Assembly (NCBI GenBank): GCA_002269645.1
Contig: NIVC01000816.1
Location: 1 to 64,000, forward strand
Direction of reading: 5' to 3'
From: Macrostomum lignano
Lineage: Eukaryota
Length of the DNA stretch: 64,000 bases
Under the pieces are notes generated by a model. That model had not been told where the DNA came from. It ran no database searches and saw nothing but the letters and a program-made list of their open reading frames with translations. The position numbers were made by a program, and so were the translations under genes. Shown piece after piece: positions 2,737-63,428 of this stretch (positions are counted from its first letter, which is position 1; every line of letters begins with the position of its first letter).

Positions 2737-9730
<6,994 letters not shown>

Positions 9731-11039: not shown

Positions 11040-11405
<366 letters not shown>

Positions 11406-11473
11406 AGCCAGCCAGTCGCAAACAGTGAAAGTGAGTCCAAGTCCGCAATGCCGGGCCATAAGCTACTCAAGCC

Positions 11474-14066
11474 TCAGTTGCCCCCGTCCTGCACGTTAAC
11501 CTGGATGGTTTTGCCCTTGGGGTCGTCAAATCGGTCAGGCGTGGCCACACTGACCAGCATGAGGACGCCGTACATGAGGATCACGGTGATCACAAGCAGC
11601 ACCAAGAGGCTGAACCAGACCTCAACAGAGAAGAATCCGACGCAGTCGTTGACATTCTTGGAGAATTTGCCGTCGGCAGGGATGCCGAATGGCTGCAGCT
11701 GGAATTTGCCGAAGATCAGAGTCAGCGCCGCGGAGCCGTTGCTACCGGTGCCGCCGCTGGTGGACAGCCTGGTGTTGTTGGTGCAGTGGTAGCAGCTACC
11801 GTTGGGCGTGATGAAGCTGGCCAGACTCTCCTGCGTCAGGGCGGTCTCGGCCACGTTGGTGCAGTTGGCGGAGCTGCCGGACTTGCAGGAGAGCGAAGCG
11901 GTGCCGGAGGCGATGCTCCAGGGACTCGTTGAGCTCTTGGTGTCGCCGACGAAGTTCAGAGTGAGCTTCAGTGCAGCGAGAGGCGACTGCAGAGCCGAAT
12001 CGGGAAACGACAGGGCCAGGGTTCGATTCCCACCTGCGGCGTTGCACGTGCTGAGCTTGGTGTCGATGATGGAGGAGCCGTCGGCTACGGGGAGCACGGG
12101 CGGCAGCGTCTTCACCTTGCTGTTCTGGGTCAGCTGGACCTGCGGCGGGGTGAGAGTTTAGGGAGGGGCTCAGCGGCTGATCTCCTGGCACAGTCAGGGC
12201 AGCTTTTGGAGTCACGGTCCGACGCTATGAGGTTTACATGTGCGAGCGGTTTGTGTAGGCTATTGGGCGATTATCCTGAGGGGTTCAGGGCGACTATTCT
12301 GAGGGTTTAGGGCGATTATCCTGAGAGGTTTAGGGCGAGTATCCTGAGGGGTTTAGGGCGAGTATCCTGAGGGGTTTAGGGCGATTATCCTGAGGGGTTT
12401 AGGGCGATTAACCTGAGGGTTTAGTGCGATTATCCTGAGAGGTATAGGGCGATTATCTTTAGGGCGATTATCCTGAGGGTTTAGGGTGATTATCCGGAGG
12501 GGTTTAGGGCGATTATCCTGAGGGCTTTAGGGCGATTATCCTGAGGGCTTTAGGGCGATTATCCTGAGGGCTTTAGGGCGATTATCCTGAGGGCTTTAGG
12601 GCGATTATCCTGAGGGCTTTAGGGCGATTATCCTGAGGGTTTAGGGCGATTATCCTGAGGGCTTTAGGGCGATTATCCTGAGGGCTTTAGGGCGATTATC
12701 CTGAGGGGTTTAGGGCGATTATCCTGAGGGGTTTAGGGCGATTAACCTGAGGGTTTAGTGCGATTATCCTGAGAGGTATAGGGCGATTATCTTTAGGGCG
12801 ATTATCCTGAGGGGTTTAGGGTGATTATCCGGAGGGGTTTAGGGCGATTATCCTGAGGGCTTTAGGGCGATTATCCTGAGGGCTTTAGGGCGATTATCCT
12901 GAGGGGTTTAGGGCGATTATCTGGAGAGTTTAATGCGATTCTTTCGAGTTTTGAGGCGATTTATTCAAAGATTAAGAAGGGCGATTCTTCAGAGAGGCAA
13001 CTAGATAATTTTTATGGGAGGTTTAGGCGCAATTCCCGGCAGAGCTTATGGCGAATACCCAAGAATTTGTTTGAAAGATTCAGAATAACAAATCCAGACA
13101 CAGTTTCAGAAAACCAACCTGCAGGGAGGCGAAGTACAGCAGCACATCGCTGCTGCAGTTCACAAAGGTGCCATTGGAGCTGGGCGAAGCGGTCGGAGCC
13201 GCGAGCAGGTGGCGGCCAGCGGAGACGGCGGCCTCAGCAGAGGCGGCGGCATCGGCGGCGGCCGGAGCCGGATCCGACTCGTGGGTGGCGGTGAAGACGG
13301 CGACGAATGGCAGGCCGCGAGACTGGGAAAAAAAGCGGAAAAAACTTTTTTAATGCTGCATATACTACTAGTAGAGAGATAAATAAGCGAACTATAAATA
13401 AATATTTTAAAAGACTGCGTTTTAATCTATGTAAGTTTCAGAATTTTTTTGAAAATTGCTTTTCCCTAAAACAGCCAAAATACCGTCGTACCTAGTCAGT
13501 CAGTCAGTCAGTCAGTCAGATCATCAGCTCACCTGCAGCGCAGCGCACGCAGCGCCAAGCAGCCGATCAGCGGCGCCGGCGTCGGCGGCCCGAGCGAGCA
13601 CCAGCCGCGAGGCACCGCCAGCAGCAGTGGCAGCTTCGACCACTCGGTCGACCTCTTTGCCATCGTTGGCGACATCGATGGGGGCGCCGCCGCGCCAGTC
13701 GAGGCTTCGCAGCGCCGGCAGCAGCTTGTCGGCCTCTGCCACCAGCAGGTGCCGGCCGCCGAGCTTCTCCGACAAGCCGGCGACGCTGGCGAAGGGGCTG
13801 GCCGAGCCCTGGCCAGCCGAGTAGACGTCGCCGCCGGACCTGGCGAAGTCGGGCAGGGAGAGGCCCTCATCGACAGTGACGACCAGCAGCAGGCCGCCGG
13901 CGGAGCGGTGCAGGGCTTCGGCCAGCTGCTGAGAGTTCAGGCGAGCCGACGACAGGCTGGCGAGGGAGTCGACGGAGCCGCGGCTGCTGACCACAACGGC
14001 GGGCACCGAGGCGGAGGCGCAGGCCAGGGAGGCCAGAAAAGCCAATAGAGCGAGTTGATGCGGCAT
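11474..14066 (-). CDS. ATP6AP1: V-type proton ATPase accessory subunit S1 (Ac45), 467 aa, 3 exons
   Basis: Exons 14066-13533, 13322-13119 and 12139-11474 are all phase 0 and join in frame. Signal peptide, GRHLL processing-like site, and the C-terminal signature LQLQPF...FSKNVNDCVGFFS..W..L...TM...TPDRFDDPKGKTI. Confidence 0.92.
12265..12930. repeat. ~23-bp minisatellite (TTTAGGGCGATTATCCTGAGGGC)n, ATP6AP1 intron 2
   Basis: Directly visible. Confidence 0.95.
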
Positions 14067-14129
14067 GGCAGCTGGGTTGCATGGGGGACATCAGAATTGA
14101 ATTCGAGTTGGCAAAATTGCTACAAGACT

Positions 14130-14500
14130 ACATGGGGATCAAATGATAACCAAGACTATATTATGGATCAGGTGAGAACCAAGACTATATTGGGGATCAG
14201 GTGAGAACCAAGACTATATTAGGGATCAGGTGAGAACCAAGACTATATTGGGGATCAGGTGGGAACCAAGACTATATTGGGGATCAGGTGAGAACCAAGA
14301 CTATATTATGGATCAGGTGAGAACCAAGACTATATGAGGATCAGATCAGGTGAGAACCAAGACTATATTAGGGATCAGGTGAGAACCAAGACTATATGAG
14401 GATCAGATCAGGTGAGAACCAAGACTATATTAGGGATCAGGTGAGAACCAAGACTATATTGGGGATCAGGTGAGAACCAAGACTATATGAGGATAAAATT
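14130..14500. repeat. 29-bp minisatellite (GATCAGGTGAGAACCAAGACTATATTGGG)n between the MRPL30 stop and the ATP6AP1 start
   Basis: Directly visible. Confidence 0.95.
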
Positions 14501-14641
14501 AAAACCAATACTATAAGTGGATCGGGTAAACAAAGACTACGCTAATAGCAAAAAGACTACAAGAGCAGTTGGCCACGGAGTGCAGCATATTGTAAGAGAA
14601 CTAACATGTGCTAATCAGTAGGCAGGTATATTTGCAAGCAT

Positions 14642-17079
14642 TCAATAATTGCGCCAAGGAAACGCATTAAAATCGGCTTCAAAGTTCAGATTGGGCCGCT
14701 TAGTGCCGTCCGGGTTGGTCCGCCTGGACAGGCTCTGCTTCATGGCGGCGTCCCGGCGCCACAGGCCCGAGTAGCGGTAGGCGGAGCCGTCCTGCATGTG
14801 CTGGTAGCGGTGGTGCTGGGTGAAATACTCGCTAAACATCAGGCAGGCCTTCCAGCGGCGCTCGTGGTAGCGCGGCATCGAGTGGATTCGGCGCTTGGAG
14901 GCTTCCAGCTCGGCCTCGGCGTGCCGCTCCGGCTGGACCTCCACGGCGGAGCCGGCGAGACGGCGGCGCATGCGCAGCTCGCCGCACTCGTTTGTGTAGC
15001 AGTTGGACAGGTCCGCCTCGGTGGCCGGCAGCCCGTCTGGCATCGTCAGCGGCTGGATCTGCGGCGAGGGAGGGCGATTCTCTATGGATCTCTGTGCTCA
15101 GGGGCGATTCTACAGGGGTCTCTGTGCTCAGGGTGATTCTTTAGGGGTCTCTGTGCTCAGGGGCGATTCTTTAGGGGTCTCTGTGCTCAGGGCGATTCTT
15201 TAGGGGTCTCTGTGCTCAGGGGCGATTCTTTAGGGGTCTCTGTGCTCAGGGGCGATTCTTTATGGATCTCTGTGCTCAGGGGCGATTCTTTATGGGTCTC
15301 TGTGCTCAGGGTGATTCTTTAGGGGTCTCTGTGCTCAGGGGCGATTCTTTAGGGGTCTCTGTGCTCAGGGGCGATTCTTTAGGGGTCTCTGTGCTCAGGG
15401 TGATTCTTTATGGATCTCTGTGCTTAGGGGCGATTCTTTATGGATCTCTGTGCTCAGGGGCGATTCTTTAGGGGTCTCTGTGCTCAGGGGCGATTCCTTA
15501 TGGATCTCTGTGCTCAGGGGCGATTCTTTATGGATCTCTGTGTTTAGGGGCGATTCTTTATGGATCTCTGTGCTCAGGGGCGATTCTTTATGGATCTCTG
15601 TGCTCAGGGGCGATTCTTTAGGGGTCTCTGTGCTCAGGGGCGATTCTTTATGGATCTCTGTGCTCAGGGGCGATTCTTTATGGATCTCTGTGCTCAGGGG
15701 CGATTCTTTAGGGGTCTCTGTGCTCAGGGGCGATTCTTTAGGGGTCTCTGTGCTCAGAGGCGATTCTTTAGGGTCTCTGTGCTCAGGGGCGATTCTTTAT
15801 GGATCTCTGTGCTCAGGGGCGATTCTTTAGGGGTCTCTGTGCTCAGGGGCGATTCTTTAGGGGTCTCTGTGCTCAGGGGCGATTCTTTATGGATCTCTGT
15901 GCTCAGGGGCGATTCTTTATGGATCTCTGTGCTCAGGGGCGATTCTTTAGGGGTCTCTGTGCTCAGGAGCGATTCTTTATGGATCTCTGTGCTCAGGGGC
16001 GATTCTTTATGGGTCTCTGTGCTCAGGGTGATTCTTTATGGATCTCTGTGCTTAGGGGCGATTCTTTATGGATCTCTGTGCTCAGGGGCGATTCTTTAGG
16101 GGTCTCTGTGCTCAGGGGCGATTCCTTATGGATCTCTGTGCTCAGGGGCGATTCTTTATGGATCTCTGTGTTTAGGGGCGATTCTTTATGGATCTCTGTG
16201 CTCAGGGGCGATTCTTTATGGATCTCTGTGCTCAGGGACGATTCTTTAGGGGTCTCTGTGCTCAGGAGCGATTCTTTAGGGGTCTCTGTGCTCAGGGGCG
16301 ATTCTTTATGGATCTCTGTGCTCAGGGGCGATTCTTTAGGGGTCTTTGTGCTCAGGGGAGATTCTCTATGGATCTCTGTGCTCAGCGGCGATTCTCTATG
16401 GGCCTCTGTTTTTGTTGGATAGGACTCAGGTGCGATATTTTTATAGGCTTGGAACTGGGTAATGATTATTGACTTTGGATTGAGAGGCGATTCTGACAAA
16501 CGGCTCATACAAGAGAAGAAGCAATCAAATAAAAGCAGCAGTGCTATTTTGTCTCTAAGGATTCTAAGACTAAGATCCGACACAAAAGAAGCAAATAAAC
16601 GCCAAGCTTACCTGCAACAGGTGCTGCACTTTCCGCAGATCATCAGCCACACTGGGAATATTGGGCAGGGGCAGCCACTGCCGCATAGGGGTGTCCTTTT
16701 CCATGCCCAGCTTGTACAGCAGGCACTTTTCATAGTAGGTGCTGGCTTTCCAGGGCAGCAGGCGCCGGATCATGAGCACCTTGGTGGGCTCCGGCTGAGC
16801 AGCCGCCTGGCCAGACTGCTCCAGTTTCTGCTTCTGGGCGGCCTCAGCCGCGTGCAGATCGAACAGCCGCTTGGCCCAGGCCTGCGGCTGCAGGTGCTCA
16901 ACGCTGCCCGGCACCGGCTTGGACTCCCAGGTGCGGCCAACCTGGAGGACGCCGCTGGAGTGAAGGCAGCGACGGGAGACGACGCTGACGCCGCACAGGC
17001 GAATCGAAGTCAATGGGGACGGCATGCAGCAATAGGAGAGCAGGGCTTTATTAGCTACTGGTAGTAGCCACTCAGGCAT
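14642..17079 (-). CDS. MRPL30: Mitochondrial ribosomal protein L30 (uL30m) with a long C-terminal extension, 2 exons
   Basis: Exons 17079 (or 17025)-16612 and 15058-14642 are phase 0. The sequence YEKCLLYKLGMEK...LPNIPSVADDLRKVQHLLQ|IQPLTMPDGLP...SNCYTNECGEL matches the MRPL30 pattern [28 protein letters not shown]...TCLKSTGEL. Confidence 0.82.
15072..16405. repeat. 30-bp minisatellite (GGGGCGATTCTTTATGGATCTCTGTGCTCA)n filling the MRPL30 intron
   Basis: Directly visible; runs to within about 15 nt of the 3' splice site. Confidence 0.95.
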
Positions 17080-24148: not shown

Positions 24149-25427
24149 TTTAGTTCAATGGATTTCTTATTTGCGCAGTCATAATAAACATACAGTATGA
24201 CATTACATGTACATTTGCATTTGATGGGTCATTTAAATTGATAAATACGCCAAATTTAATTTGTACGTTCCACGATGCGGTTCGTTTATTCGTTTGTCAC
24301 AAAAAAGCCCGTACATGTACATATGTATCTCACGTTTTTTATACTTTGACTCGCAAAATACTCATCTTTGATATTTGGTACATGCTACATCAACTTTTGT
24401 AGAACATAAAGCTGTCAGGAGTGTCAGAAAACAGTTCTGTATTCGGGGGCCTGCACTACATGTACAGAGAACTTTTTACTGGGCTTAGATTGTTCATGTG
24501 CAGGCATAAAACAAGGAACGCTGCACACACTAGCTCATATAAAAGAAACCTGCAGATATCATTTACACAGACTGAGAAAATTCTCGGATCTGTAATCGTT
24601 CAATGCACAGCAGCAATACACAGGTAATGCACAGGCAACTACACAGTCAAGTTTCAACGCTGTCACGCTGCAACTATGATAAGCTTGCAATGATAATGAC
24701 CTAGGAAAGGCAATGTAGAGAGAGATCTACCAGGCTTGGCCAGTGACGCACCGGCACCAATTCAGGCACCAATAAGATAATACTTAACACTCGAGTTAGC
24801 AAGAAAGCCAAGCAAACTGAAAGAAAAAAACAACAATATCTCAGCTTTAATGTTTCTAATACGTTCAGAGAAGCGAATGTGAAGTCTTTAAAAAGAGCAC
24901 AATTGATTTACTCCTATAGAAAACCTACGCAACAAAATCGAAGAACAATATGAAAAACGAAGTCGACGTGCCTCGTCTTTAAGATAGCCATACCAATCAT
25001 TAACACCGGAACTGTTACTATTATAACAAACTAGTCATTTGGAAAAGTATTATAGCAAAAAATAGAGATCAGATGCGGAATCAGATTACTAATAAAACTA
25101 TAAAAACCCAGTGCAGCGCAGAGCTGAAGGAAGACGGAGGATCCTTTTCTTTTTTATCGTTTCGATTCGCTGCGGCACTGCAGTATAAAGTACAGAGAGT
25201 ACGTTATAGCTGGATGAATAAGAGCAAGCAGACACAGTGTCAATAGAATGTCGCAACGATTACAAGTGTGTGAATATTTAAGAATAAATATAATAATCTA
25301 TTCCAAGAAATGTTTTTTAAATCAGCAAACTAAATCATAGTTTTATTTGTTGATAGAAACTATTCGTTAGCAGAGGAGCAACCAAGTGCGGGCATTTCTC
25401 TCTGATGACCTTGGTGTGGCAAGGTCA

Positions 25428-25515
25428 TCTATCATCTATCTATCTATGTATCTATCTATGTGTCTATGTATCTATGTATCTATGTATCTATCTCTCTATC
25501 TCTCTCTATCTCTAT
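25428..25515. repeat. (TATC)n-type microsatellite 3' of the DyP stop
   Basis: Directly visible. Confidence 0.9.
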
Positions 25516-25547
25516 CCAGTATCAGGTTGCAGCCTCGCCCAGCTCAC

Positions 25548-28500
25548 TCAGGCGAACTTGGCCAGCTCAGAGGTGGGCGGGAAGTACCAGTAGTTGCCAG
25601 CCACGCAGCGGGTGATCCGCATGATGTCGTCGGAGTGCGAGTCGCTGCCCTTGCCGACCATGCGGTCCAGCATGAAGTTGAAGTTGTCCGGGCTGGCCGC
25701 GTAGGCGATGAAGAACAGACCGGACTCGCCGGACACCGTGCTGGGGGTTGGGGAGCGGCTTGGCGATTGCAGGTGCGACTGAGAATAGGGAATCGGCCGG
25801 ACAACAATGGGGAATCGCCCTGACACCAATTGGGAATCATCCTGACACTAATCGGGAATCGCCCTGACACCAATCGGGAATCGCCCTGACACCCATCGGG
25901 AATCACCCTGACACTAATCGAGAATCGCCCTGACACCAATCGGGAATCGCCCTGACACCAATTGGGAATCATCCTGACACCAATCGGGAATCGCCCTGAC
26001 ACCAATCGGGAATCACCCTGACACCAATCGGGAATCACCCTGACACTAATCGGGAATCGCCCTGACACCAATCGGGAATCGCCCTGACACCCATCGGGAA
26101 TCACCCTGACACTAATCGAGAATCGCCCTGACACCAATCGGGAATCGCCCTGACACCAATTGGGAATCATCCTGACACCAATCGGGAATCGCCCTGACAC
26201 CAATCGGGAATCACCCTGACACCAATCGGGAATCACCCTGACACCAATCGGGAATCGCCCTGACACCAATTGGGAATCATCCTGACACCAATCGGGAATC
26301 GCCCTGACACCAATCGGGAATCACCCTGACACCAATCGGGAATCACCCTGACACCAATCGGGAATCATCCTGACACCAATCGGGAATCGCCCTGACACCA
26401 ATCGGGAATCACCCTGACACCAATCGGGAATCACCCTGACACTAATCGGGAATCGCCCTGACACTAATCGGGAATCGCCCTGACACCCATCGGGAATCAC
26501 CCTGACACTAATCGAGAATCGCCCTGACACCAATCGGGAATCGCCCTGACACCAATTGGGAATCATCCTGACACCAATCGGGAATCGCCCTGAATCGCCC
26601 TGACACCAATCGGGAATCATCCTGACACCAATCGGGAATCATCTTGACACCAATCGGGAATCGCCTTGACACCAATCGGGAATCGCCCTGACACCAATCG
26701 GGAATCGCCCTGACACCAATCGGGAATCACCCTGACACTAATCGGGAATCACCCTGACACTAATCGGGAATCATCCTGACACCAATCGGGAATCACCCTG
26801 ACACCAATCGGGAATCGCCCTGACACCAATCGGGAATCACCCTGACACTAATCGGGAATCGCCCTGACACCAATCGGGAATCATCCTGACACCAATCGGG
26901 AATCGCCCTGACACCAATCGGGAATCGCCCTGACACCAATCGGGAATCACCCTGACACTAATCGGGAATCACCCTGACACTAATCGGGAATCGCCCTGAC
27001 ACTAATCGGGAATCATCCTGACACCCATCGGGAATCGCCTTGACACCAATTGGGAATCACCATGACACCAATCGGGAATCGCCCTGACACCAATTGGGAA
27101 TCACCCTGACACCAATCGGGAATCGCCCTGACACCAATCGGGAATCGCCCTGACACCAATCGGGAATCATCCTGACACCAATCGGGAATCGCCCTGACAC
27201 CAATCGGGAATCATCCTGACACCAATCGGGAATCGCCCTGACACCAATCGGGAATCATCCTGACACCAATCGAGAATCGCCCTGACACCAATCGGGAATC
27301 ATCCTGACACCAATCGGGAATCGCCCTGACACCAATCGAGAATCGCCCTGACACCAATCGGGAATCGCCCTGACACCAATCGGGAATCGCCCTGACACCA
27401 ATCGGGAATCGCCCTGACACTAATCGGGAATCACCCTGACACTAATCGGGAATCGCCCTGACACTAATCGGGAATCACCCTGACACTAATCGGGAATCAC
27501 CCTGACACCAATCGGGAATCGCCCTGACACTAATCGGGAATCACCCTGACACTAATCGGGAATCGCCCTGACACCAATCGGGAATCGCCCTGACACCAAT
27601 CGGGAATCGCCCTGACACCAATCGGGAATCACCCTGACACCAATCGGGAATCGCCCTGACACCAATCGGGAATCGCCCTGACACTAATCGGGAATCACCC
27701 TGACACCAATCGGGAATCGCCCTGACACCCATCGGGAATCACCCTGACACTAATCGAGAATCGCCCTGACACCAATCGGGAATCGCCCTGACACCAATTG
27801 GGAATCATCCTGACACCAATCGGGAATCGCCCTGACACCAATCGGGAATCACCCTGACACCAATCGGGAATCACCCTGACACTAATCGGGAATCGCCCTG
27901 ACACCAATCGGGAATCGCCCTGACACCCATCGGGAATCACCCTGACACTAATCGAGAATCGCCCTGACACCAATCGGGAATCGCCCTGACACCAATTGGG
28001 AATCATCCTGACACCAATCGGGAATCGCCCTGACACCAATCGGGAATCACCCTGACACCAATCGGGAATCACCCTGACACCAATCGGGAATCGCCCTGAC
28101 ACCAATTGGGAATCATCCTGACACCAATCGGGAATCGCCCTGACACCAATCGGGAATCACCCTGACACCAATCGGGAATCACCCTGACACCAATCGGGAA
28201 TCATCCTGACACCAATCGGGAATCGCCCTGACACCAATCGGGAATCACCCTGACACCAATCGGGAATCACCCTGACACTAATCGGGAATCGCCCTGACAC
28301 CAATCGGGAATCGCCCTGACACCCATCGGGAATCACCCTGACACTAATCGAGAATCGCCCTGACACCAATCGGGAATCGCCCTGACACCAATTGGGAATC
28401 ATCCTGACACCAATCGGGAATCGCCCTGAATCGCCCTGACACCAATCGGGAATCATCCTGACACCAATCGGGAATCATCTTGACACCAATCGGGAATCGC

Positions 28501-31500
28501 CTTGACACCAATCGGGAATCGCCCTGACACCAATCGGGAATCGCCCTGACACCAATCGGGAATCACCCTGACACTAATCGGGAATCACCCTGACACTAAT
28601 CGGGAATCATCCTGACACCAATCGGGAATCACCCTGACACCAATCGGGAATCGCCCTGACACCAATCGGGAATCACCCTGACACTAATCGGGAATCGCCC
28701 TGACACCAATCGGGAATCATCCTGACACCAATCGGGAATCATCCTGACACCAATCGGGAATCGCCCTGACACCAATCGGGAATCGCCCTGACACCAATCG
28801 GGAATCACCCTGACACTAATCGGGAATCACCCTGACACTAATCGGGAATCATCCTGACACCAATCGGGAATCACCCTGACACCAATCGGGAATCGCCCTG
28901 ACACCAATCGGGAATCACCCTGACACTAATCGGGAATCGCCCTGACACCAATCGGGAATCATCCTGACACCAATCGGGAATCGCCCTGACACCAATCGGG
29001 AATCGCCCTGACACCAATCGGGAATCACCCTGACACTAATCGGGAATCACCCTGACACTAATCGGGAATCGCCCTGACACTAATCGGGAATCATCCTGAC
29101 ACCCATCGGGAATCGCCTTGACACCAATTGGGAATCACCCTGACACCAATCGGGAATCGCCCTGACACCAATTGGGAATCACCCTGACACCAATCGGGAA
29201 TCGCCCTGACACCAATCGGGAATCGCCCTGACACCAATCGGGAATCATCCTGACACCAATCGGGAATCGCCCTGACACCAATCGGGAATCATCCTGACAC
29301 CAATCGGGAATCGCCCTGACACCAATCGGGAATCATCCTGACACCAATCGAGAATCGCCCTGACACCAATCGGGAATCATCCTGACACCAATCGGGAATC
29401 GCCCTGACACCAATCGAGAATCGCCCTGACACCAATCGGGAATCGCCCTGACACCAATCGGGAATCGCCCTGACACCAATCGGGAATCGCCCTGACACTA
29501 ATCGGGAATCACCCTGACACTAATCGGGAATCGCCCTGACACTAATCGGGAATCACCCTGACACTAATCGGGAATCGCCCTGACACCAATCGGGAATCGC
29601 CCTGACACTAATCGGGAATCACCCTGACACTAATCGGGAATCGCCCTGACACCAATCGGGAATCGCCCTGACACCAATCGGGAATCGCCCTGACACCAAT
29701 CGGGAATCACCCTGACACCAATCGGGAATCGCCCTGACACCAATCGGGAATCGCCCTGACACTAATCGGGAATCACCCTGACACTAATCGGGAATCGCCC
29801 TGACACCAATCGGGAATCGCCCTGACACCAATCGGGAATCATCCTGACACCAATCGGGAATCGCCCTGACACCAATCGGGAATCATCCTGACACCAATCG
29901 GGAATCATCCTGACACCAATCGGGAATCGCCCTGACACCAATCGGGAATCATCCTGACACCAATCGGGAATCGCCCTGACACCAATCGGGAATCATCCTG
30001 ACACCAATCGAGAATCGCCCTGACACCAATCGGGAATCATCCTGACACCAATCGGGAATCGCCCTGACACCAATCGGGAATCGCCCTGACACCAATCGGG
30101 AATCGCCCTGACACTAATCGGGAATCACCCTGACACTAATCGGGAATCGCCCTGACACTAATCGGGAATCACCCTGACACTAATCGGGAATCGCCCTGAC
30201 ACCAATCGGGAATCGCCCTGACACCAATCGGGAATCGCCCTGACACCAATCGGGAATCGCCCTGACACTAATCGGGAATCACCCTGACACTAATCGGGAA
30301 TCGCCCTGACACCAATCGGGAATCGCCCTGACACTAATCGGGAATCACCCTGACACTAATCGGGAATCGCCCTGACACCAATCGGGAATCGCCCTGACAC
30401 TAATCGGGAATCGCCCTGACACTAATCGGGAATCACCCTGACACCAATCGGGAATCGCCCTGACACCAATCGGGAATCGCCCTGACACTAATCGGGAATC
30501 ACCCTGACACCAATCGGGAATCGCCCTGAGAAGCGGGTCCAAGCATGGCCGTCAATCCTCACCCATAAGGCATGGATTGGCGCACAATCTCGAACTGCTT
30601 CTTCTGCTCGAAGGCGTTGCCCCCAGTCATCCTGGCCACGTGAGAGGAGATGGACTTGCGCCGCAGCTCGGTGCTGTCCGTGATGTCCCGGCCAACGAAG
30701 CTTTCCAGCTCGGCCGGCTTGGAGTCCCGGATCTTGGCCAGGTCGTGAATCCAGCGCTGCGTGATGACGAAGCTGCCGCCGCCCCGGGCCACAGCGATCT
30801 GCTTGCGACTCTCCTCGTCAGCCGCGTTCTCCGTGCCGTCGATGAAGCCGCTAAGGTCGCGCCCGTTCCGGTACACGAAGCTGTAGATGTCCTCGAATGA
30901 GCGGACCGAGCCCTTGGGCATGGCGGCCGTCACGGCTTGGCACAGCTCAAACAGCTTGCTCACCTGGGTGCAGCCGAGATAGAAATTAACTGTACCATTT
31001 TCATCCCCAATGGCCACTCTCACTGGCTCCCTAGTGGAATACAGTGTCTGCTTAGATAAAAGTGCAACAAGGACTTTATAAATCCACACAAATGAATTAT
31101 CTGGTGATTTCTGTCCCAGTGACAGCAGAGAAACGCACCTGGTTAGACTTGGCGTGGATGAACAAATCGCCGCCAGTGCTCGGCAGTTCGCCCAGAGCCC
31201 CGCGCCTGTGCGGATAGCTGAAGTCCACGGAGGCGGCGCTGCCCGACTGGCCGACAGCGGCCCGGTAGAAGCTGTAGCCGAAGCCCACGCCCGCCCAGGT
31301 CTCGTCAGATTCGTCGCGCAGATCCGGTGGGCACACCTGGGATGGGTGGGGGTGTGAAAGAAGGTTAAGACAAGAGCGGTGGCACATCAAAGGGCTCTGT
31401 GATGGACTTGAGAGAGGCGGCACATCAAAGGGCTCTGTGATGGACTTGAGAGAGGCGGCACATCAAAGGGCTCTGTGATGGACTTGAGAGCGGCGGCACA

Positions 31501-32026
31501 TCAAAGGACTTTGTGATGGACTTGAGAGCGCGTGGCACATCAAAGTACTTTGTGATGGACTTGAGATCGGCGGCACATCAAAGAATTGTGATGAATTTGA
31601 GAGCGGCGGCACATCAAAGGACTGTGATGGACTAAGAACTTCAATGCGGCGGCACATCAAAAGAATGCACCCAAGATCTTTACCCACCTTGTCCACCAGC
31701 TTCTGCAGATTGGCAGCAACGCGAAGCACCTCCCGCTTATCGGCGCGAGGGTCCAAATGGATGGTGAGGTACAGCGCGTGGTCCTTGGTCTCGCTGTAGA
31801 CAGTTGGCTGGACATTGTCCGAGGCGGCAGCGGCGGTGACGGCGGTCAGGGCGCCTCCGGGCAGGGCGGCAAGGCGCCGGCGCTGATCAACAAAAGCGAC
31901 GGTGGCGGCGGCAGCCAGCAGCAGGCGGGAGGGCCGGGGTGGCGGCGGAGCTCCGCCAGATGACAGGCCCCGACGGCAGCCGAGGCGAGCAGCGGTGGCG
32001 GCGACAAGGCGACAGCGGTTGAGCAT
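25548..32026 (-). CDS. Dye-decolorizing (DyP-type, YfeX-like) heme peroxidase with a putative mitochondrial presequence, 376 aa, 4 exons
   Basis: Exons 32026-31688, 31336-31139, 30963-30563 and 25740-25548 (phases 0,0,2) join in frame. Motifs: TGGDLFIH, RDLSGFIDGTEN (GxxDG Asp), SSHVARM (proximal His), IVRQSMPYG (distal Arg), GLFFIAY, GNYWYFPP. The N-terminus MLNRCRLVAATAARLGCRRGLSS is Arg-rich with no acidic residues. Confidence 0.92.
25810..30530. repeat. 22-bp minisatellite (GGGAATCGCCCTGACACCAATC)n, about 215 copies, filling DyP intron 3
   Basis: Directly visible; copy number is length divided by 22. Confidence 0.97.
31375..31662. repeat. ~38-bp minisatellite in DyP intron 1
   Basis: GGCACATCAAAGGGCTCTGTGATGGACTTGAGAGAGGC repeated about 7 times. 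Confidence 0.9.
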
Positions 32027-32489
32027 GGCTTCAAGTGTACAGAGTGAGCTCTATTGGCAGAGATAATGCTAATGCATGCAATCAAGTAATGTGCACGGGG
32101 TGTTAGCTTGCTCACAGATAATTGCATTTGTTATTAGAGGCAGGGGCAACCTGGCAAACTTTCCTATGGGGGGATACACCAAGGTCAAAGTGCTATGACA
32201 GAGTCACATGGTAGCATGTATAGCAACAAAGGGCAACAAAAAAGTTTTGGTCAGGCTCTTTAAGGGGGGGGGATACACCCCCTATCCCCTGGACATTGTT
32301 GCATATTATATCTCTTTTCTAAAAAATTTTTCCTAAATAGGCCCTAGGTCTTATAGCATAGTTTCAAAGAAACCAATATCCTTATAGCTATATAGCATTT
32401 TAACAAAAGTAATAATTAGAAGCTATTGGGCAGCTCTCTACTTTACTTTATATCTTTATCCCCATTTCTTAATATTTAACAGGCTTATA

Positions 32490-36493: not shown

Positions 36494-37653
36494 CCTCAGG
36501 CTTTGATCCTGATTCTAATCTTTATCGATTTCAAGAAGGCATTCGACTCGGTTGTCAGAGCCGTGCTTCCAATGGTGCTCCGCGCGTACAACGTGCCTGA
36601 GCAGCTGATCTCCGCCATCATGGCGATGTACCGTGATACGACAGCTGCTGTGACAACACCGGACGGCCTATAGGACTCCTTTGAGATCTCCTCCGGAGTG
36701 CTTCAGGGAGATACGCTGGCGCCGTTCCTGTTCGTCCTGGTGCTTGACTGGGTGCTGCGGACTGCTCTTCCTACCGACGACGACGGCTTTCTGCTGCGGC
36801 GACGCGTGGGTCGACGTCAACCGGAGAAGCGGCTCAGCGTGCTTGGCTACGCTGACGACCTCGCCCTGCTGTCCTCGACCGTCGAGGGCGCCCAACGGCA
36901 GCTGGACAGGCTAGTTGCCGTTGCGGCGAGCGTCGGCCTGGTGGTCAACACGCAGAAGACCGTTGTGCTCTGCGTGCCGGACGACATCGAGGCTGCAATT
37001 TTCTGCCGAGGCGCTGACGGGCAGGCGACCGAGCTCCCGCGATGTCAGCAGTTCGTCTACCTCGACGGTCTGGTTCCAGACGCTCGCGAGGACCTGCGAC
37101 GCCGCCGCGGGCTTGCCTGGGCTGCCTTTCGTTCTGTGAGGGCAGTCCTGCAGTCCGAGGCCCTACCGGACCGCAAGAGGGCGGCGCTGTTCCAGGCGGT
37201 AATCGAGACCGTCCTGCTGTGCAACGCCGAGACCTGGACGCTGACGGACTCACTTGAACAGCAAGTCGATGCGGCGCACGCTGGCCTGCTGCGCGCCGCC
37301 TTCAACATCGGCGTCGAGCGAGTCAACAACGCGGCACTCTATCGCCGCGCTGGCCTGCCACGTCCAAGCGATCTACTGCGCCGTCGGCGACTCCAGCTCG
37401 CAGGCCATCTCATCCGCGCCGAGTCGTACTGCCCACAGCCGGTGCAGGAGGTGCTGCTGCTCACGCTGTAGGCACCCTACCGGCGAGGTCAAGCGCGAAC
37501 TCGGCGTTACGTTGACTGTCTGCTGGCTGACGCCGGCGCCCCGGACACTGCCGGTGGCGCGGCCTTTGTTCGCGCCCAAGCCATGAAGCGCGCCCTGTGA
37601 CGCTGACTTTTGCCATCCTGACAGCGTATTTTGTTGTGTTGTTGTTGTTGTTG
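36494..37653 (+). mobile_element. 5'-truncated RTE-clade non-LTR retrotransposon
   Basis: RT motifs FIDFKKAFDSV, GVLQGDTLAPFLF and GYADDLALL; two in-frame TAG stops (36671, 37469); (TTG)n tail; TSD TCTGCGCG at 36486-36493 and 37654-37661. Confidence 0.9.
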
Positions 37654-47849: not shown

Positions 47850-49936
47850 CTAGTTGAGCTCCTTGTCCACAATGAGCCCGCCAAGGCCGCTGCCAGCCCT
47901 AGACAGGCGGGCGATGAGTTTCCGCAGATCCCGGATGCCCGTCACCTGCTCGGTCAGGAACTCGGACTCGATGAAGCCCACCAGCTGAAATTTCAAGACT
48001 CGAGTATCAATTTTGTAGAGTGCACGTAGACATAGAGACATATACAGTTCTTTTCTGTTAAGCTGAAGGTGAGCTTTTTTGTAGCCAATGGAAGACTTAG
48101 ATAGAATTTTTAGTATATGGATAATAGTCTCTTGAAAAATGCTGACGCTGATGATTGGCTGGCTGGTGGTAGGGAGTTCGGGGCGGAGGTTGGGGGTGAG
48201 TCAGCTGGGGCTGAGCCAGCCAGCCAATCAGCGAGGTGCCTCACAGCGTAGCATTTTGGCTGGTGCTTTGTTGGCATTAGAACTATGCGTGAAGCCAAGA
48301 AGGCCCCAAATACATGAGAATGAATTTATCGATTTGACAGGAATGCACTCAATATTTGACAGGCTAGTTCAGTACCCAATCAGAGCGGCCATCTACAGTA
48401 AGGCTTACATGCGGGTCGCTCCCCATGTCGACGGCCCGATCTCGCAGTCTGTACAACTCCTGTGTGATGTTCCTCTCGACGTCAAGAGCCATTTTGGCTG
48501 CAGCAAGGGCGGAGGACCAGTCAAACTTGCCTGGAGGCTGCAACAAAGATACGTTTATGGGGCTACATTGAAGCTTTAAGCGGTAGTTTGAAAAATAAAT
48601 ATAAAACTGTTCTAATAACCGGGAACTGGGATCAGAGGATCAAGTGACCAGGGATCAGGTGACCAGGGGGTCAGTTAACCCTGGGGATCAGGTGACCAGG
48701 ATATTAGGTGACCAGGGGATCAGGTGACCAGAAGATCAGGTGACCAGGGATCAGGTGACTAGGGGATCAGGTGACCAGGGGGTCAGTTAACCCTGGGGAT
48801 CAGGTGACCAGGGGATCAGGTGACCAGGGGATCAGGTGACCAGGTGTTCGTGACAAGATGTTAGGTTACCAGGTGTTAGGTTACCAGGTGTTAGGTGACC
48901 AGGTGTTAGGTGACCAGGGGATCAGGTGACCAGGGGATCAGGTGACCAGGTGTTGGTGACAAGATGTTAGGTTACCAGGTGTTAGGTTACCAGGTGTTAG
49001 GTGACCAGGTGTTAGGTGACCAGGGGATCAGGTGACCAGGGGATCAGGTGACCAGGTGTTGGTGACAAGATGTTAGGTTACCAGGTGTTAGGTTACCAGG
49101 TGTTAGGTGACCAGGTGTTAGGTGACTAGGTGTGAAGTGGCTTGGTGAACAAGCACTCACAATAATCAGCTTCAGCTTGACGTGGCCGCCCCGCATGATG
49201 AGGTAGTCGATCAGTTTGTGCGCGCGCTCTTGCTGCTTGTCGGCGGCCTTCTTGAAAAAATTCTTGATGCAGGGAAGACCGACGCTGGGCCCGCCGAAGT
49301 AGTTGGCCTGCGGGCGTGGCGGTCGGCGAACTTGCGTTTTCAATTTGAGCTAGGAATTTGGATTGAATGAAACTGAGGGGTTCAACGGATAGAGTTTCAC
49401 ACGATGGCTAAGAGTTTCTTTTAACAAAATTATTGATAGAAAAGTTTCCATAAACTCTGAGCAAGTTAGAGGGTGGGCGTGAGCTCAAGGTACGCTCGTA
49501 CTCCCTGAGTAAGACGCTGTGCAGAGTTTAGCACGAATTAAGGTCGTTGGGTGGAGACCTTGGCAATGCGTGGGGTCAGGAAAAAGACTTACCATAGTCT
49601 CGTAGAGGTACATGGCGCTGAACTCTCTTTCGATCTGGTCGTTGATCATCGACACCGAGATGCTGCAGAGCCTCTGTCGAATGTCTGCGGATTGCGGGGT
49701 TCAGCAACGTGCATGGTTTATGGGCTCGTATTACCTGCTAGTAGCTTAAAATTTTGTCTGAAGATTTTGCAGCGCTGCAGTGGTTTAAGATATGGCTTCT
49801 CACTGTCTCTATTAGCCACTGCTTGACTTCTCAATACCCACCTGAGCATTATAAGTTAGTTATGCGCTTTACAGAGGTATTTTACAAGTTAGTCGATCTG
49901 ATTAGAGGCCAAAATTAAGCTTAAACTAGATTTAAT
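47850..49936 (-). pseudogene. Ferritin copy 2: signal exon dead, exons 3-5 still open
   Basis: The start ATG is changed to ATT (49934-49936). Exon 1 has a TAA in frame, and exon 2 has indels and an in-frame TGA. Downstream, 49649-49593, 49307-49161, 48537-48409 and 47984-47850 join in frame (155 aa from an internal Met). Confidence 0.75.
48640..49135. repeat. 15/16-bp minisatellite (GGATCAGGTGACCAGG / TGTTAGGTGACCAGG)n in ferritin-2 intron 3
   Basis: Directly visible; only a few degenerate units occur in the copy-1 intron. Confidence 0.92.
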
Positions 49937-59605: not shown

Positions 59606-60140
59606 CTGTCGCTCTCGGAACGCATCATCGTAGAACTGTCTCGGGATATCTTGGACCTCAGATACAGGATCTTTTGTGGCACTTGGTTTTGCTCGGCACG
59701 GCTCACTGACTGGTTGCTCCAGAGACACTCTGTTGACAGGCACAGTGCGAGCACAACGCGGTGTTCCCGCTGCGGCTCTGAAGCAGCAGGTGTTGCACCC
59801 ACCATCCAACGCCTTTTCTAGGCGTGGGGAGCTGCTTGCTGTGAAGATTGTGGATCGGCGAGCCTCTGGCCTAAAGACCGTGTACATGCTAGACAGTGCT
59901 GGCACAGTGTGCAAGTTACAAGGGTTCAGCCAGGCGGTCAGGAGCAGCAACTGTTGAAGTCTCAGACAGCTCTAGACTACAACCAAAGCATGGGAGGAGT
60001 GGACAGGATTGAGTTGTGAGCCCTACAAGACAAGTAGAAGAACGCAGAAGTAGTTTTTCAAGCTGGCCTCCTATCTCTTGCTGCAACTTGTTCGCAACTC
60101 CTTTATGGCCTATAAGCACATTGGCGGCAGCAGCAGCAGT

Positions 60141-62329: not shown

Positions 62330-62850
62330 TTTTCATGTTGTTTTCTATACTGTCATGTTGTTTTCTATACCGTCATGCTGTTTTCTATACTGTCATGCTG
62401 TTTTCTATACTGTCATGCTGTTTTCTATGCTGTCATGCAGTTTTCTATGCTGTCATGCTGTTTTCTATGCTGTCATGCTGTTTTCTATACTGTCATGCTG
62501 TTTTCTATACTGTCATGCTGTTTTCTATGCTGTCATGCAGTTTTCTATGCTGTCATGCAGTTTTCTATACCGTCATGCTGTTTTCTATACTGTCATGCTG
62601 TTTTCTATGCTGTCATGCAGTTTTCTATGCTGTCATGCTGTTTTCTATGCTGTCATGCTGTTTTCTATGCTGTCATGCTGTTTTCTATACTGTCATGCTG
62701 TTTTCTATGCTGTCATGCTGTTTTCTATACTGTCATGCTGTTTTCTATACTGTCATGCTGTTTTCTGTACTGTCATGCTGTTTTCTATACTGTCATGCTG
62801 TTTTCTATACTGTCATGCTGTTTTCTATACTGTCATGCTGGTTTTGTGCT
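62330..62850. repeat. 20-bp minisatellite (TGTCATGCTGTTTTCTATAC)n
   Basis: Directly visible. Confidence 0.95.
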
Positions 62851-63428
62851 GTCATGCTGTTTTGTCTCTACTTGTGACGATGCTGTTTTTATACGATTGC
62901 GTTGCTGTTTTCTGTGATATGTTTCTAATAGTATACTACTCGTTTTGTTATATCTCAGGTTGTTAAAGCAAAAAGTCACGTGATTCTAAAATCTAGTCAG
63001 TTCAATTCCCAAAATTTTTCATCGAAGTTTAATTTCCAGTTAAGGGTAAAGCACAACTTCTACTGAATGCAAGTTTGAATGCAAGTTTTTTTTCAAAGCC
63101 GGAAAATGTTCGAGCGATGCATCGAAGTAAAATCAGATGTTTATTTCGTTACTAGTTGGTGAATAAATGAAAATATGCTTTCTCCATTGTAGTAAAGTCG
63201 ATCTTCTAATACGACTATGCTGGAGTGACTCACCGCAGATTATTTTGTTCAAATCATTGATAGTTAAAAGGAATTCGGATAATGCGCTCGTAGTTAAAGC
63301 GCCGATATCAGAAAATGGAGTCACGTCGATATTTAATCTGAAACCTTGAGCGTCATAATGCTGGTCCTGAAGTCAGGCTAATCAGCTACACCTATGAGAC
63401 TTTGCGTCAGTCCTCTCCTCCACAGTCT

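What the first reader, a model, noticed from the sequence alone, without database searches (positions are those of the whole stretch)
25548..32026. Intact, intron-containing, apparently mitochondrion-targeted YfeX-like DyP peroxidase in an animal
DyP-type peroxidases are mainly bacterial and fungal and are absent from the standard animal models. This copy keeps all catalytic residues (GFIDG Asp, proximal His, distal Arg), has three spliceosomal introns, and gained a ~68-aa Arg/Ala-rich N-terminal extension that looks like a mitochondrial presequence. E. coli YfeX oxidises porphyrinogens and was proposed to extract iron from heme. A mitochondrial version could act in heme/porphyrin metabolism or H2O2 removal. 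Origin by HGT or ancient retention is open.
Basis: partly seen in the sequence, partly recalled or inferred. Interest (0 to 1): 0.8.

Follow-up and report, generated by a model that had tools for sequence, protein, structure and literature searches.

The report
Known flatworm DyP haem peroxidase gene
This is a real, intact haem peroxidase gene of the flatworm Macrostomum lignano, but it is already annotated and belongs to a published animal-wide enzyme family; its predicted mitochondrial address remains untested.

Summary
On the minus strand, 32026-25548, four exons joined by three GT-AG introns encode a 376-aa class P/B (YfeX/KpDyP-like) DyP peroxidase. The catalytic Asp221, His287 and Arg307 are all present, the predicted fold is confident, and dN/dS is 0.10.

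The novelty claim does not hold. The exact protein is already in NCBI and UniProt for Macrostomum lignano. Orthologues at 50-65% identity occur in molluscs, annelids, brachiopods, bryozoans, nemerteans, priapulids, hemichordates, placozoans and other flatworms. A 2022 paper defined this clade as DyP subclass P1, and a tapeworm member has been assayed.

Ancient retention is favoured over recent horizontal transfer. Other animals share 5-8 intron positions, related protists carry the same N-terminal architecture, and the best bacterial identity found is 40%.

The N-terminal extension is conserved and two-part: an acid-free basic segment with an MPP-type R-3 motif, then a Gly/Ala-rich hydrophobic stretch. 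That points to the mitochondrial inner membrane or intermembrane space rather than the matrix, but this is sequence inference only. This copy has 7 residues deleted from that stretch. All three Macrostomum introns lie at lineage-specific positions, and two are swollen by tandem repeats.

The parts
31688..32026 (-). Exon 1 (aa 1-113): start codon, the whole N-terminal extension and the first beta-alpha unit of the DyP domain
   Evidence: Gene model. A transcript contig from a related species aligns to 31685-32027. An in-frame stop lies 8 codons upstream.
31811..32026 (-). Coding region for the N-terminal extension (aa 1-72): a basic acid-free segment with an R-3 motif (R20-G-L|S-S), a hydrophobic run, and a linker ending in the conserved AA motif
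   Evidence: The HMM match starts at aa 73. pLDDT is below 60 for aa 1-70. The conserved architecture is seen in 81-89 homologues.
31889..31924 (-). Hydrophobic run L35-V46 (LLLAAAATVAFV). It is only 12 residues here, against 19-20 in the paralogue entry A0A1I8HSY2 and in the related species, because of a 7-codon in-frame deletion
31337..31687 (-). Intron 1 (351 nt, GT-AG, phase 0, after aa 113). Its position is shared with none of 5 other animal phyla, and it contains a 38-bp minisatellite at 31373-31633
31139..31336 (-). Exon 2 (aa 114-179)
30964..31138 (-). Intron 2 (175 nt, GT-AG, phase 0, after aa 179), at a lineage-specific position
30563..30963 (-). Exon 3 (aa 180-312 plus 2 nt). It carries the GFIDG motif (D221 codon at 30838-30840), the proximal His287 codon (30640-30642) and the distal Arg307 codon (30580-30582)
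   Evidence: the codons were read directly from the sequence
25741..30562 (-). Intron 3 (4822 nt, GT-AG, phase 2), at a lineage-specific position. It consists of 33 nt of unique sequence, the satellite, and 43 nt of unique sequence
25784..30529 (.). 22-bp satellite (AATCGGGAATCGCCCTGACACC, about 215 copies, 91% matches) with a higher-order duplication at a lag of 1836 bp. It fills intron 3
25548..25740 (-). Exon 4 (aa 313-376 plus the stop codon at 25548-25550): C-terminal beta-strands and helix of the DyP domain

Best explanation
This is a functional nuclear gene of the flatworm Macrostomum lignano for a haem-b dye-decolorizing (DyP-type) peroxidase of class P/B. It belongs to the eukaryote-specific, mostly metazoan subclass P1. 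Mechanism, inferred from the family: H2O2 binds on the distal face of the haem; Asp221 and Arg307 promote heterolytic O-O cleavage to Compound I; His287 is the proximal iron ligand; the enzyme is then reduced by an electron-donor substrate that is still unknown. The precursor carries a conserved two-part N-terminal signal. The first part is an acid-free, Arg/Ser-rich amphipathic segment with an MPP R-3 cleavage motif. The second is a Gly/Ala-rich hydrophobic stretch, followed by a linker that ends in a conserved 'AA...QPSV' motif. This most likely directs the protein through TOM/TIM23 into mitochondria. In typical family members it arrests the protein in the inner membrane with the catalytic domain on the intermembrane-space side, and a second cleavage then releases a soluble enzyme of about 34 kDa. 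The likely role is removal or use of respiratory H2O2. The gene was inherited vertically from early animals, probably from early eukaryotes, and was lost in vertebrates, tunicates and, according to the published survey, several other lineages. In the Macrostomum lineage the ancestral introns were lost and three new ones arose, two of them later inflated by tandem repeats. Shown here: the gene structure, family membership, catalytic residues, fold, purifying selection, phyletic spread and intron pattern. Inferred: haem binding and activity, mitochondrial and IMS localisation, processing, and physiological role.
For: Gene and enzyme: exon model; support from a related species' transcript; identity to the annotated proteins; HMM matches above the curated cutoffs; PDB sequence hits at E about 1e-37. 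The AlphaFold domain has pLDDT of 90 or more. Foldseek target-normalised TM-scores are 0.85-0.90 to VcDyP, KpDyP and YfeX. D221, H287 and R307 are invariant. dN/dS is 0.10 overall and 0.07 in the domain. A tapeworm family member has peroxidase and catalase-like activity and is induced under aerobic conditions (bioRxiv 10.1101/2022.11.07.515413). Ancient vertical descent: named orthologues at 50-65% identity in at least 9 phyla. Five to eight intron positions and phases are shared among oyster, hemichordate, priapulid, placozoan and schistosome. Animals group together in 92 of 100 NJ bootstraps, and animals plus protists in 72 of 100. The best bacterial identity found is 40% or less. This agrees with published subclass P1 (PMC9719856). 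Targeting: in 81 homologues the segment before the hydrophobic stretch has a median length of 34 aa, with 20.5% R+K and 0.7% D+E, against 13.7% D+E in the domain. The R-x-[FYLIMV]-[SAT] motif occurs in 54 of 81 sequences, against 21 +/- 4 (maximum 33) in 500 shuffles. The hydrophobic moment exceeds that of shuffles. The hydrophobic stretch starts at a median of residue 34, with a KD17 median of 1.44. The same layout is seen in Echinamoeba and in unnamed protist sequences. It fits the definition of a stop-transfer bipartite presequence (PMC8061763). As an internal contrast, schistosome-specific paralogues carry classical signal peptides whose hydrophobic core starts at residue 8-10 with KD above 1.9. 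Processing: a blue-mussel gill 2-DE spot identified as DyP-like ran at 30.4 kDa and pI 6.00 (PMC5302490). The predicted Mytilus precursor is 42.1 kDa at pI 8.86. The form cut after the AA motif is 33.8 kDa at pI 6.04.
Against: There is no localisation experiment for any animal DyP, and no trained predictor (TargetP, MitoFates, DeepLoc) could be run. The targeting case rests on composition and motif statistics. The EmDyp authors read the equivalent hydrophobic helix as a secretory signal. A basic N-terminal tail followed by a hydrophobic helix is also the layout of a type II signal anchor. In this window's copy the hydrophobic run is only 12 residues, too short to span a membrane, so its sorting may differ (matrix, or impaired). 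The linker between the hydrophobic stretch and the proposed second cleavage site is 25-40 aa, longer than in classic IMP substrates. The mussel spot was identified from only 2 peptides. The phylogeny is a rough NJ tree on 69 sequences, and the presumed bacterial representatives in it are unnamed. The bacterial scan was limited to two peptide patterns. Transcript support for the splicing comes from a related species and from the existing annotation, not from M. lignano reads examined here.
Confidence: 0.6

Rival explanations
1. The enzyme is the same, but it enters the secretory pathway. The hydrophobic stretch would act as an uncleaved or cleaved signal anchor, and the DyP domain would be lumenal, extracellular or tegumental, protecting the animal against external or host-derived oxidants.
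For: The EmDyp preprint predicts a transmembrane helix near the N-terminus and interprets it as an export signal; an alternative 5' splice form lacks it. A basic tail followed by a hydrophobic helix fits type II topology. Schistosomes do have DyP paralogues with genuine signal peptides, so secretion has evolved in this family. The conserved small-residue 'S-A-A' motif resembles an AXA signal-peptidase site.
Against: The hydrophobic stretch starts at a median of residue 34, far from the N-terminus, and is only moderately hydrophobic (KD17 median 1.44). The preceding 34 aa exclude acidic residues almost entirely (0.7%) and are enriched 2.5-fold over shuffles for the MPP R-3 motif. The AA motif lies 25-40 residues beyond the hydrophobic core, too far for signal peptidase. 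EmDyp is induced by aerobic growth, which fits a respiratory source of H2O2.
Confidence: 0.2
2. It is a mitochondrial matrix enzyme. The whole extension would be a long matrix presequence, or in this copy the shortened hydrophobic run would no longer stop transfer. The enzyme would then act on matrix H2O2 or on haem and porphyrin intermediates near ferrochelatase.
For: This window's copy has only a 12-residue hydrophobic run, and all three BOX15 gene models share it. The first part of the extension has all the features of a presequence. YfeX oxidises porphyrinogens in vitro (PMC3215433).
Against: Across phyla, and in the related Macrostomum species, the uncharged stretch is about 18-20 residues long and strongly conserved in position. 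A mere spacer would not be expected to be conserved in that way. From my own knowledge: nematodes are haem auxotrophs. Trichinella carries a family member, which argues against an obligatory role in haem synthesis.
Confidence: 0.15
3. The gene is a recent horizontal acquisition from bacteria, or bacterial contamination of the assembly.
For: DyPs are mainly bacterial and fungal, and the best characterised relatives are enterobacterial.
Against: The gene has three spliceosomal introns and is embedded in Macrostomum-type repeat DNA. GC3 is 0.84, with AT-rich flanks. Identity to any prokaryote found is 40% or less, against 50-65% to other animals. Intron positions are shared between placozoan and bilaterian orthologues. 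Animals group together with 92% NJ support.
Confidence: 0.02
4. This copy is a decaying paralogue. The 7-codon deletion in the sorting segment would mark it as a redundant copy of a polyploid genome on its way to becoming a pseudogene.
For: M. lignano DV1 carries large duplicated blocks (PMC5730564). At least four protein variants exist in the cluster, and one of them lacks the proximal-His segment. The deletion is derived relative to the related species.
Against: The ORF is intact, every invariant family residue is retained, and the splice sites are canonical. The catalytic domain is 100% identical to the longer paralogue entry over the aligned part. The same 376-aa product is encoded on two contigs.
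Confidence: 0.05

Closest known systems
DyP-type peroxidase subclass P1 (Yoshida/Sugano classification, Biochem Biophys Rep 2022, PMC9719856); Echinococcus multilocularis EmDyp is the only assayed animal member (bioRxiv 10.1101/2022.11.07.515413)
   Same: It has the same catalytic domain of about 300 aa, the same conserved distal Asp/Arg and proximal His, and the same phyletic group (Platyhelminthes and other Metazoa plus some protists). Like EmDyp, it has an N-terminal extension that contains a hydrophobic helix.
   Different: Nothing essential: this is a member of that subclass. EmDyp is longer (434/461 aa) and uses alternative 5' splicing. The Macrostomum gene has the extension fused into exon 1 and has a different intron set. 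The published work does not discuss mitochondrial targeting.
Enterobacterial class B/P DyPs: E. coli YfeX (5GT2), Klebsiella KpDyP (6FKS), Vibrio VcDyP (5DE0)
   Same: The fold matches, with target-normalised TM-scores of 0.85-0.90. The GXXDG motif and the catalytic triad match residue for residue. The domain is the same size.
   Different: Identity is only 30-39%. The bacterial enzymes are cytoplasmic, have no N-terminal extension and are intronless. The porphyrinogen-oxidase activity shown for YfeX has not been tested for any animal member.
Yeast cytochrome c peroxidase Ccp1 and other stop-transfer IMS proteins (cytochrome b2, Smac/DIABLO, AIF)
   Same: By analogy only: a haem peroxidase, or an IMS protein, made with a two-part presequence consisting of a basic matrix signal followed by a hydrophobic sorting segment, with maturation in two steps (PMC8061763).
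   Different: Ccp1 belongs to the unrelated peroxidase-catalase superfamily. No localisation, processing protease or electron donor is known for animal DyPs. The similarity between the Ala-rich hydrophobic stretches of Ccp1 and the Macrostomum protein is recalled from memory and was not tested.
Dictyostelium discoideum DyPA (7O9J)
   Same: It is a eukaryotic class P DyP with a solved structure, and Foldseek gives E = 1.5e-25.
   Different: It is cytoplasmic and belongs to subclass P4, not P1 (PMC9719856). It lacks the two-part extension and has a lower structural match (target-normalised TM-score 0.80-0.82).

Membership tests
DyP-type peroxidase superfamily (TIGR01413 / Pfam PF20628 / IPR006314) | Profile-HMM match above the curated threshold | tested here: met
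   TIGR01413 scores 137.4 bits against a cutoff of 100.5, covering aa 73-372 of the protein and positions 1-323 of the 323-position profile. PF20628 scores 106 bits against a cutoff of 20.
DyP-type peroxidase superfamily | Two-domain ferredoxin-like alpha+beta fold | tested here: met
   The AlphaFold model has pLDDT of 90 or more for aa 71-376. Foldseek gives target-normalised TM-scores of 0.85-0.90 and rmsd of 2.6-3.1 A to 5de0, 6fks and 5gt2.
DyP-type peroxidase superfamily | GXXDG motif with the distal catalytic Asp, the distal Arg and the proximal His | tested here: met
   G218-F-I-D221-G222, H287 and R307 align to KpDyP D143, H215 and R232. All are invariant in 66 animal sequences.
DyP-type peroxidase superfamily | Binds haem b and shows H2O2-dependent peroxidase activity | not testable with these tools
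   Only indirect evidence exists: recombinant EmDyp, a tapeworm member of the same family, is active.
Class P, subclass P1 (eukaryotic/metazoan DyPs) | Groups phylogenetically with metazoan and protist sequences, apart from bacterial class P enzymes | tested here: met
   In a rough distance-based NJ tree, animals group in 92 of 100 bootstraps and animals plus protists in 72 of 100. Identity is 50-65% to animals, 40-45% to divergent animals and protists, and 40% or less to bacteria. This is consistent with PMC9719856.
E. coli YfeX orthologue (porphyrinogen oxidase) | Close orthology and porphyrinogen-oxidising activity | tested here: inconclusive
   Identity is only 30-39%, and the animal clade is separate from the presumed bacterial sequences. 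The activity cannot be tested here. 'YfeX-like' is a database label, not a demonstrated function.
Mitochondrial bipartite (stop-transfer) presequence proteins | N-terminal positively charged, acid-free, amphipathic segment with an MPP cleavage motif | tested here: met
   In the window protein, the first 25 aa contain 5 R/K and no D/E, with the motif R20-G-L|S-S. Across the family, R+K is 20.5% and D+E is 0.7%; the R-3 motif occurs in 54 of 81 sequences against 21 +/- 4 in shuffles; the hydrophobic moment is 0.71 against 0.54 in shuffles.
Mitochondrial bipartite (stop-transfer) presequence proteins | Hydrophobic sorting segment of membrane-spanning length immediately downstream | tested here: inconclusive
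   The family has a median uncharged run of 18 aa starting near residue 34. The paralogue and the sister species have 19-20 aa. This window's copy has only 12 aa (LLLAAAATVAFV) because of a 7-codon deletion.
Mitochondrial bipartite (stop-transfer) presequence proteins | Demonstrated import, two-step processing and IMS residence | not testable with these tools
   The only evidence is circumstantial: a mussel 2-DE spot at 30.4 kDa and pI 6.00 fits removal of the whole extension, predicted at 33.8 kDa and pI 6.04, against a precursor of 42.1 kDa and pI 8.86.

The most novel reading that the evidence does not exclude
Subclass P1 DyPs, in animals from placozoans to hemichordates and in several protists, may be resident haem peroxidases of the mitochondrial intermembrane space. 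They would be imported through an ancient, conserved stop-transfer bipartite presequence and released by a second cleavage. That would make them an unrecognised analogue of fungal cytochrome c peroxidase for respiratory H2O2, lost in vertebrates, tunicates and the classic invertebrate models. The Macrostomum copy in this window, with its truncated sorting segment, would then be a natural variant with altered sub-mitochondrial sorting.
Probability: 0.35. Interest if true: 0.55.

Novelty: already known. Interest (0 to 1): 0.3.

Why it matters
As a gene discovery it matters little. The protein is already in the databases under the right family name. The animal clade was described in 2022, and flatworm DyPs have been flagged as parasite-specific drug targets since 2009. 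What remains open is where these enzymes act and on what substrate.

If the conserved two-part N-terminus really sends them to the mitochondrial intermembrane space, many invertebrates would possess a haem peroxidase for respiratory H2O2 that vertebrates lack. That bears on redox biology, on hypoxia and reoxygenation tolerance in molluscs and worms, and on the choice of anti-helminth targets. M. lignano is transgenic-tractable, so the localisation test is feasible.

The complete replacement of ancestral introns by three new ones, two of them swollen by satellites, is a small but clean example of intron turnover.

Tried and rejected
1. A look-up of genomic contigs for the paralogue P0001 found nothing on record. 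The paralogous locus and its introns could therefore not be compared.

2. A weak Pfam Glyco_hydro_4 hit (17 bits against a cutoff of 23.2) was rejected as noise.

3. Literature searches for mitochondrial localisation of any DyP or YfeX-like animal protein found no such claim.

4. I asked whether the Macrostomum introns might be copies of a dispersed element ('introner'). No copies of intron 1, intron 2 or the unique flanks of intron 3 occur elsewhere in the window. Only 64 kb was searched.

5. A Pfam scan of ten long ORFs elsewhere in the window gave only a reverse-transcriptase fragment. No neighbouring gene informs the function.

6. Bacterial contamination, recent HGT and pseudogene status were considered and rejected; see the rival explanations.

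7. The bacterial sister group was not resolved. The genome-contig scan is seeded by two peptide patterns and is biased towards Enterobacterales and Acidimicrobiia. The NJ tree uses unnamed cluster representatives.
Full report
**1. What is in the sequence**

The finding's coordinates are exactly the limits of a minus-strand coding sequence. The ATG is at 32026 and the TGA at 25548-25550. Reading the minus strand gives four exons: 32026-31688, 31336-31139, 30963-30563 and 25740-25548. They are separated by three introns with canonical GT...AG ends and pyrimidine-rich acceptors. The spliced ORF is 1131 nt, or 376 codons. An in-frame stop lies eight codons upstream of the ATG, and GC3 is 0.84 against AT-rich flanks.

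Of the 6.5-kb span, 4.75 kb is a 22-bp satellite of about 215 copies that fills intron 3. Without the array that intron would be 76 nt long. Intron 1 (351 nt) holds a 38-bp minisatellite.

**2. Is the gene model real?**

- A 1487-nt transcript-like contig from a public sequencing run (L001, encoding P0002, 87% aa identity, evidently a related Macrostomum species) carries the uninterrupted ORF.
- That contig aligns to the window in four blocks whose ends coincide with my exon ends.
- My 376-aa translation is letter-for-letter identical to NCBI PAA63793.1 and PAA76471.1 (BOX15_Mlig003816g2/g1, Macrostomum lignano). It is also identical to UniRef A0A267EQH5, named 'Dyp-type peroxidase C-terminal domain-containing protein'.
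- The window therefore comes from M. lignano, and the gene is already annotated.
- Against the related-species transcript, dN/dS is 0.10 overall, 0.07 in the catalytic domain and 0.26 in the N-terminal extension. That is clear purifying selection.

**3. What the protein is**

- TIGR01413 (Dyp_perox_fam) matches residues 73-372 end to end at 137 bits, against a cutoff of 100.5.
- Pfam Dyp_perox_C scores 106 bits.
- The best solved relatives are the class B/P enzymes KpDyP, ElDyP, E. coli YfeX and VcDyP, at E about 1e-35 to 1e-37.
- In the KpDyP alignment, D221 (in G218-F-I-D-G222), H287 and R307 fall on KpDyP D143, H215 and R232. The deposited KpDyP variants carry D143A and R232A substitutions (entry titles).
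- All three residues are invariant across 66 animal homologues.
- An AlphaFold model built on that alignment has pLDDT of 90 or more for residues 71-376 and below 60 for residues 1-70.
- Foldseek against the PDB returns VcDyP, KpDyP and YfeX first, with target-normalised TM-scores of 0.85-0.90.

Family membership is thus met on every feature that can be tested in silico. Haem binding and activity cannot be tested here.

**4. How widespread, and how new?**

The homologue search returned named orthologues at 50-65% identity from the following groups:

- dozens of molluscs;
- Lingula;
- bryozoans;
- a nemertean;
- annelids;
- Priapulus;
- three hemichordates;
- Trichoplax;
- many trematodes.

Most of these are labelled 'dye-decolorizing peroxidase YfeX-like'. 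An all-against-library search adds a 40-45% identity tier: cestodes, Trichinella, acanthocephalans, the amoebozoan Echinamoeba and marine protist transcripts. Naegleria follows at 36%. Proteins of about 300 aa, presumed bacterial, start at about 35%.

The literature already covers this ground:

- Schistosome DyPs were noted as a flatworm-expanded family absent from vertebrates in 2009 (PMC2764848).
- A 2022 phylogeny of all InterPro DyPs defined subclass P1 as 'mainly of Metazoa origin'. It includes Amoebozoa, Excavata and SAR members, and is absent from fungi, tunicates and vertebrates (PMC9719856).
- A 2022 preprint expressed the Echinococcus enzyme EmDyp. It showed peroxidase and catalase-like activity and induction under aerobic conditions.

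**5. HGT or retention?**

I mapped the exon structures of five annotated orthologues onto a protein alignment. Oyster, Saccoglossus, Priapulus, Trichoplax and Schistosoma share five to eight intron positions with identical phase. Five of these are shared between the placozoan and the bilaterians. The gene was therefore already intron-rich in early animals.

- In a rough NJ analysis the animals group in 92 of 100 bootstraps, and animals plus protists in 72 of 100.
- The best prokaryotic identity found was 40% or less, in Morganella, Providencia and Acidimicrobiia. That scan was pattern-seeded and hence biased.
- Echinamoeba and other protist sequences carry the same N-terminal architecture as the animals.

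Together this favours ancient vertical retention with many losses. It excludes recent transfer or contamination.

**6. An unexpected detail: intron turnover**

None of the three Macrostomum introns coincides with any intron in the other five animals. They lie after aa 113 (phase 0), after aa 179 (phase 0) and within codon 313 (phase 2). None of the shared ancestral positions is occupied in Macrostomum. The alignment is ungapped and highly conserved at all these sites.

Schistosoma keeps most ancestral positions, so the replacement is specific to the macrostomid lineage. No copies of the introns occur elsewhere in the window.

**7. The N-terminal extension**

Comparison across 81-89 full-length homologues shows a conserved three-part layout:

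- **(i) Basic segment.** Median length is 34 aa. It contains 20.5% R+K, 22.5% S+T and only 0.7% D+E, against 13.7% D+E in the domain. Its helical hydrophobic moment is above that of shuffles. The motif R-x-[FYLIMV]-[SAT] is present in 54 of 81 sequences, against 21 +/- 4 in shuffles. In the window protein it reads R20-G-L|S-S.
- **(ii) Hydrophobic stretch.** It is Gly/Ala-rich and uncharged, about 18 residues long, with a KD17 median of 1.44. It typically reads '(R/K)P-LLLG...G..YG.Y' followed by K or R.
- **(iii) Linker.** It is 25-40 aa long and ends in a conserved 'S-A-A...P-x-S-Q-P-S-V' motif just before the domain.

This is the textbook description of a bipartite stop-transfer presequence (PMC8061763). 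It predicts import through TOM/TIM23, MPP cleavage, arrest in the inner membrane with the enzyme facing the intermembrane space, and possibly a second cleavage.

Two further observations fit this reading. Schistosome-specific paralogues show what a real signal peptide looks like in this family, with a hydrophobic core starting at residue 8-10 and KD above 1.9. A blue-mussel gill 2-DE spot identified as DyP-like ran at 30.4 kDa and pI 6.00 (PMC5302490). That fits loss of the entire extension, predicted at 33.8 kDa and pI 6.04. It does not fit the precursor at 42.1 kDa and pI 8.86, or an MPP-only product at 39.0 kDa and pI 6.52.

The caveats are substantial:

- No trained predictor could be run, and there are no experimental localisation data.
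- The mussel identification rests on only two peptides.
- The EmDyp authors read the helix as a secretory signal.

I put mitochondrial targeting of some kind at about 0.6, and the IMS version at about 0.35-0.4.

**8. A peculiarity of this copy**

Relative to the paralogue entry A0A1I8HSY2 and to the related species, the window's gene lacks seven codons (VGTAAAA) inside the hydrophobic stretch. This leaves a 12-residue run, LLLAAAATVAFV, instead of 19-20 residues.

The same short form is encoded by all three BOX15 gene models, so it is probably real rather than a local error. An assembly-specific collapse in a GCN-repeat cannot be excluded. A 12-residue run cannot span a bilayer, so this copy may be sorted differently, for instance to the matrix.

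**9. Function**

The chemistry can be stated with confidence from the family. Haem-b Compound I forms on H2O2, assisted by Asp221 and Arg307, with His287 as the proximal ligand. The physiological reductant is unknown.

Porphyrinogen oxidation, shown for YfeX in vitro (PMC3215433), is possible. However, a family member occurs in Trichinella. By my own knowledge, nematodes cannot make haem, so an obligatory role in haem synthesis is unlikely.

Removal of respiratory H2O2 is the most economical role. It agrees with the aerobic induction of EmDyp. An analogy with yeast Ccp1, an IMS haem peroxidase with a two-part presequence, is attractive. It is only an analogy, and part of it rests on memory rather than on a test.

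**10. Verdict**

The gene and its family are already known. The residual interest lies in the untested localisation of an enzyme family missing from vertebrates, and in a neat case of intron replacement. Interest: 0.3.

Noticed in passing
window 25741-31687 (introns 1-3), compared with loci L002-L006: All three Macrostomum introns lie at positions shared with none of five other animal phyla. Those five share 5-8 positions among themselves. The ancestral introns were therefore lost and three lineage-specific introns gained.
   Followed up: partly
window 25784-30529: A 22-bp satellite of about 215 copies fills intron 3. It has a higher-order duplication at a lag of 1836 bp that repeats the same rare irregular 32-bp unit. 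The pre-mRNA must be spliced across 4.8 kb of satellite.
   Followed up: partly
window 12265-12921, 15072-16409 (+) and 25784-30529 (-): Three different minisatellites (23/46-bp, 30-bp and 22-bp units) share a GGGCGATT core (AGGGCGATT in most units of the first and third arrays). AGGGCGATT occurs 140 times, against 0.5 expected, which suggests a related satellite family in both orientations.
   Followed up: partly
whole window, e.g. 7-1162, 3153-3825, 4769-5740, 6201-6974, 7636-8087, 14123-14539, 48633-49133, 62333-62863: The window is unusually dense in tandem arrays. There are about 25 distinct mini- and microsatellites, including long (AGAC)n and (AGAT)n tracts at 1918-2540, 8681-9260 and 11042-11415. 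This agrees with the published 15% simple and tandem repeat content of the M. lignano genome.
   Followed up: no
window 25420-25520: A TCTA/TCTATGTA-type microsatellite lies about 30-130 nt downstream of the DyP stop codon, presumably in or near the 3'UTR.
   Followed up: no
window 36698-37471 (+): This ORF has a reverse-transcriptase (RVT_1) match at E = 7e-9. It is a retroelement fragment about 4.7 kb upstream of the DyP start.
   Followed up: no
window 60016-61765 (+): In this GC-rich region (67% GC), overlapping long ORFs read like the C-terminal RT part and the RNase H domain of a non-LTR retrotransposon (motifs 'FLGV..D..L.F..H' and 'VYTDGSA'). This was judged by eye only; Pfam gave no hit at 1e-3.
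   Followed up: no
protein P0297 (UniProt A0A1I8HJQ7, an M. lignano paralogue entry; not in the window): This annotated paralogue lacks the 8 residues SISSHVAR, which include the proximal haem-ligand His. It is either a mis-spliced gene model or a dead copy.
   Followed up: no
proteins P0113, P0116, P0117 (Schistosoma paralogues; not in the window): Schistosome-specific DyP paralogues have replaced the two-part N-terminus with a short classical signal peptide. This suggests that secreted DyPs evolved secondarily in blood flukes.
   Followed up: no
loci L002-L004 (oyster, Saccoglossus, Priapulus): A conserved phase-0 intron sits exactly at the boundary between the N-terminal extension and the DyP domain (QPS|VYS). 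'Isoform X2' entries without the extension exist in several molluscs and a nemertean. Alternative first exons may therefore give dual localisation, as reported for EmDyp.
   Followed up: no
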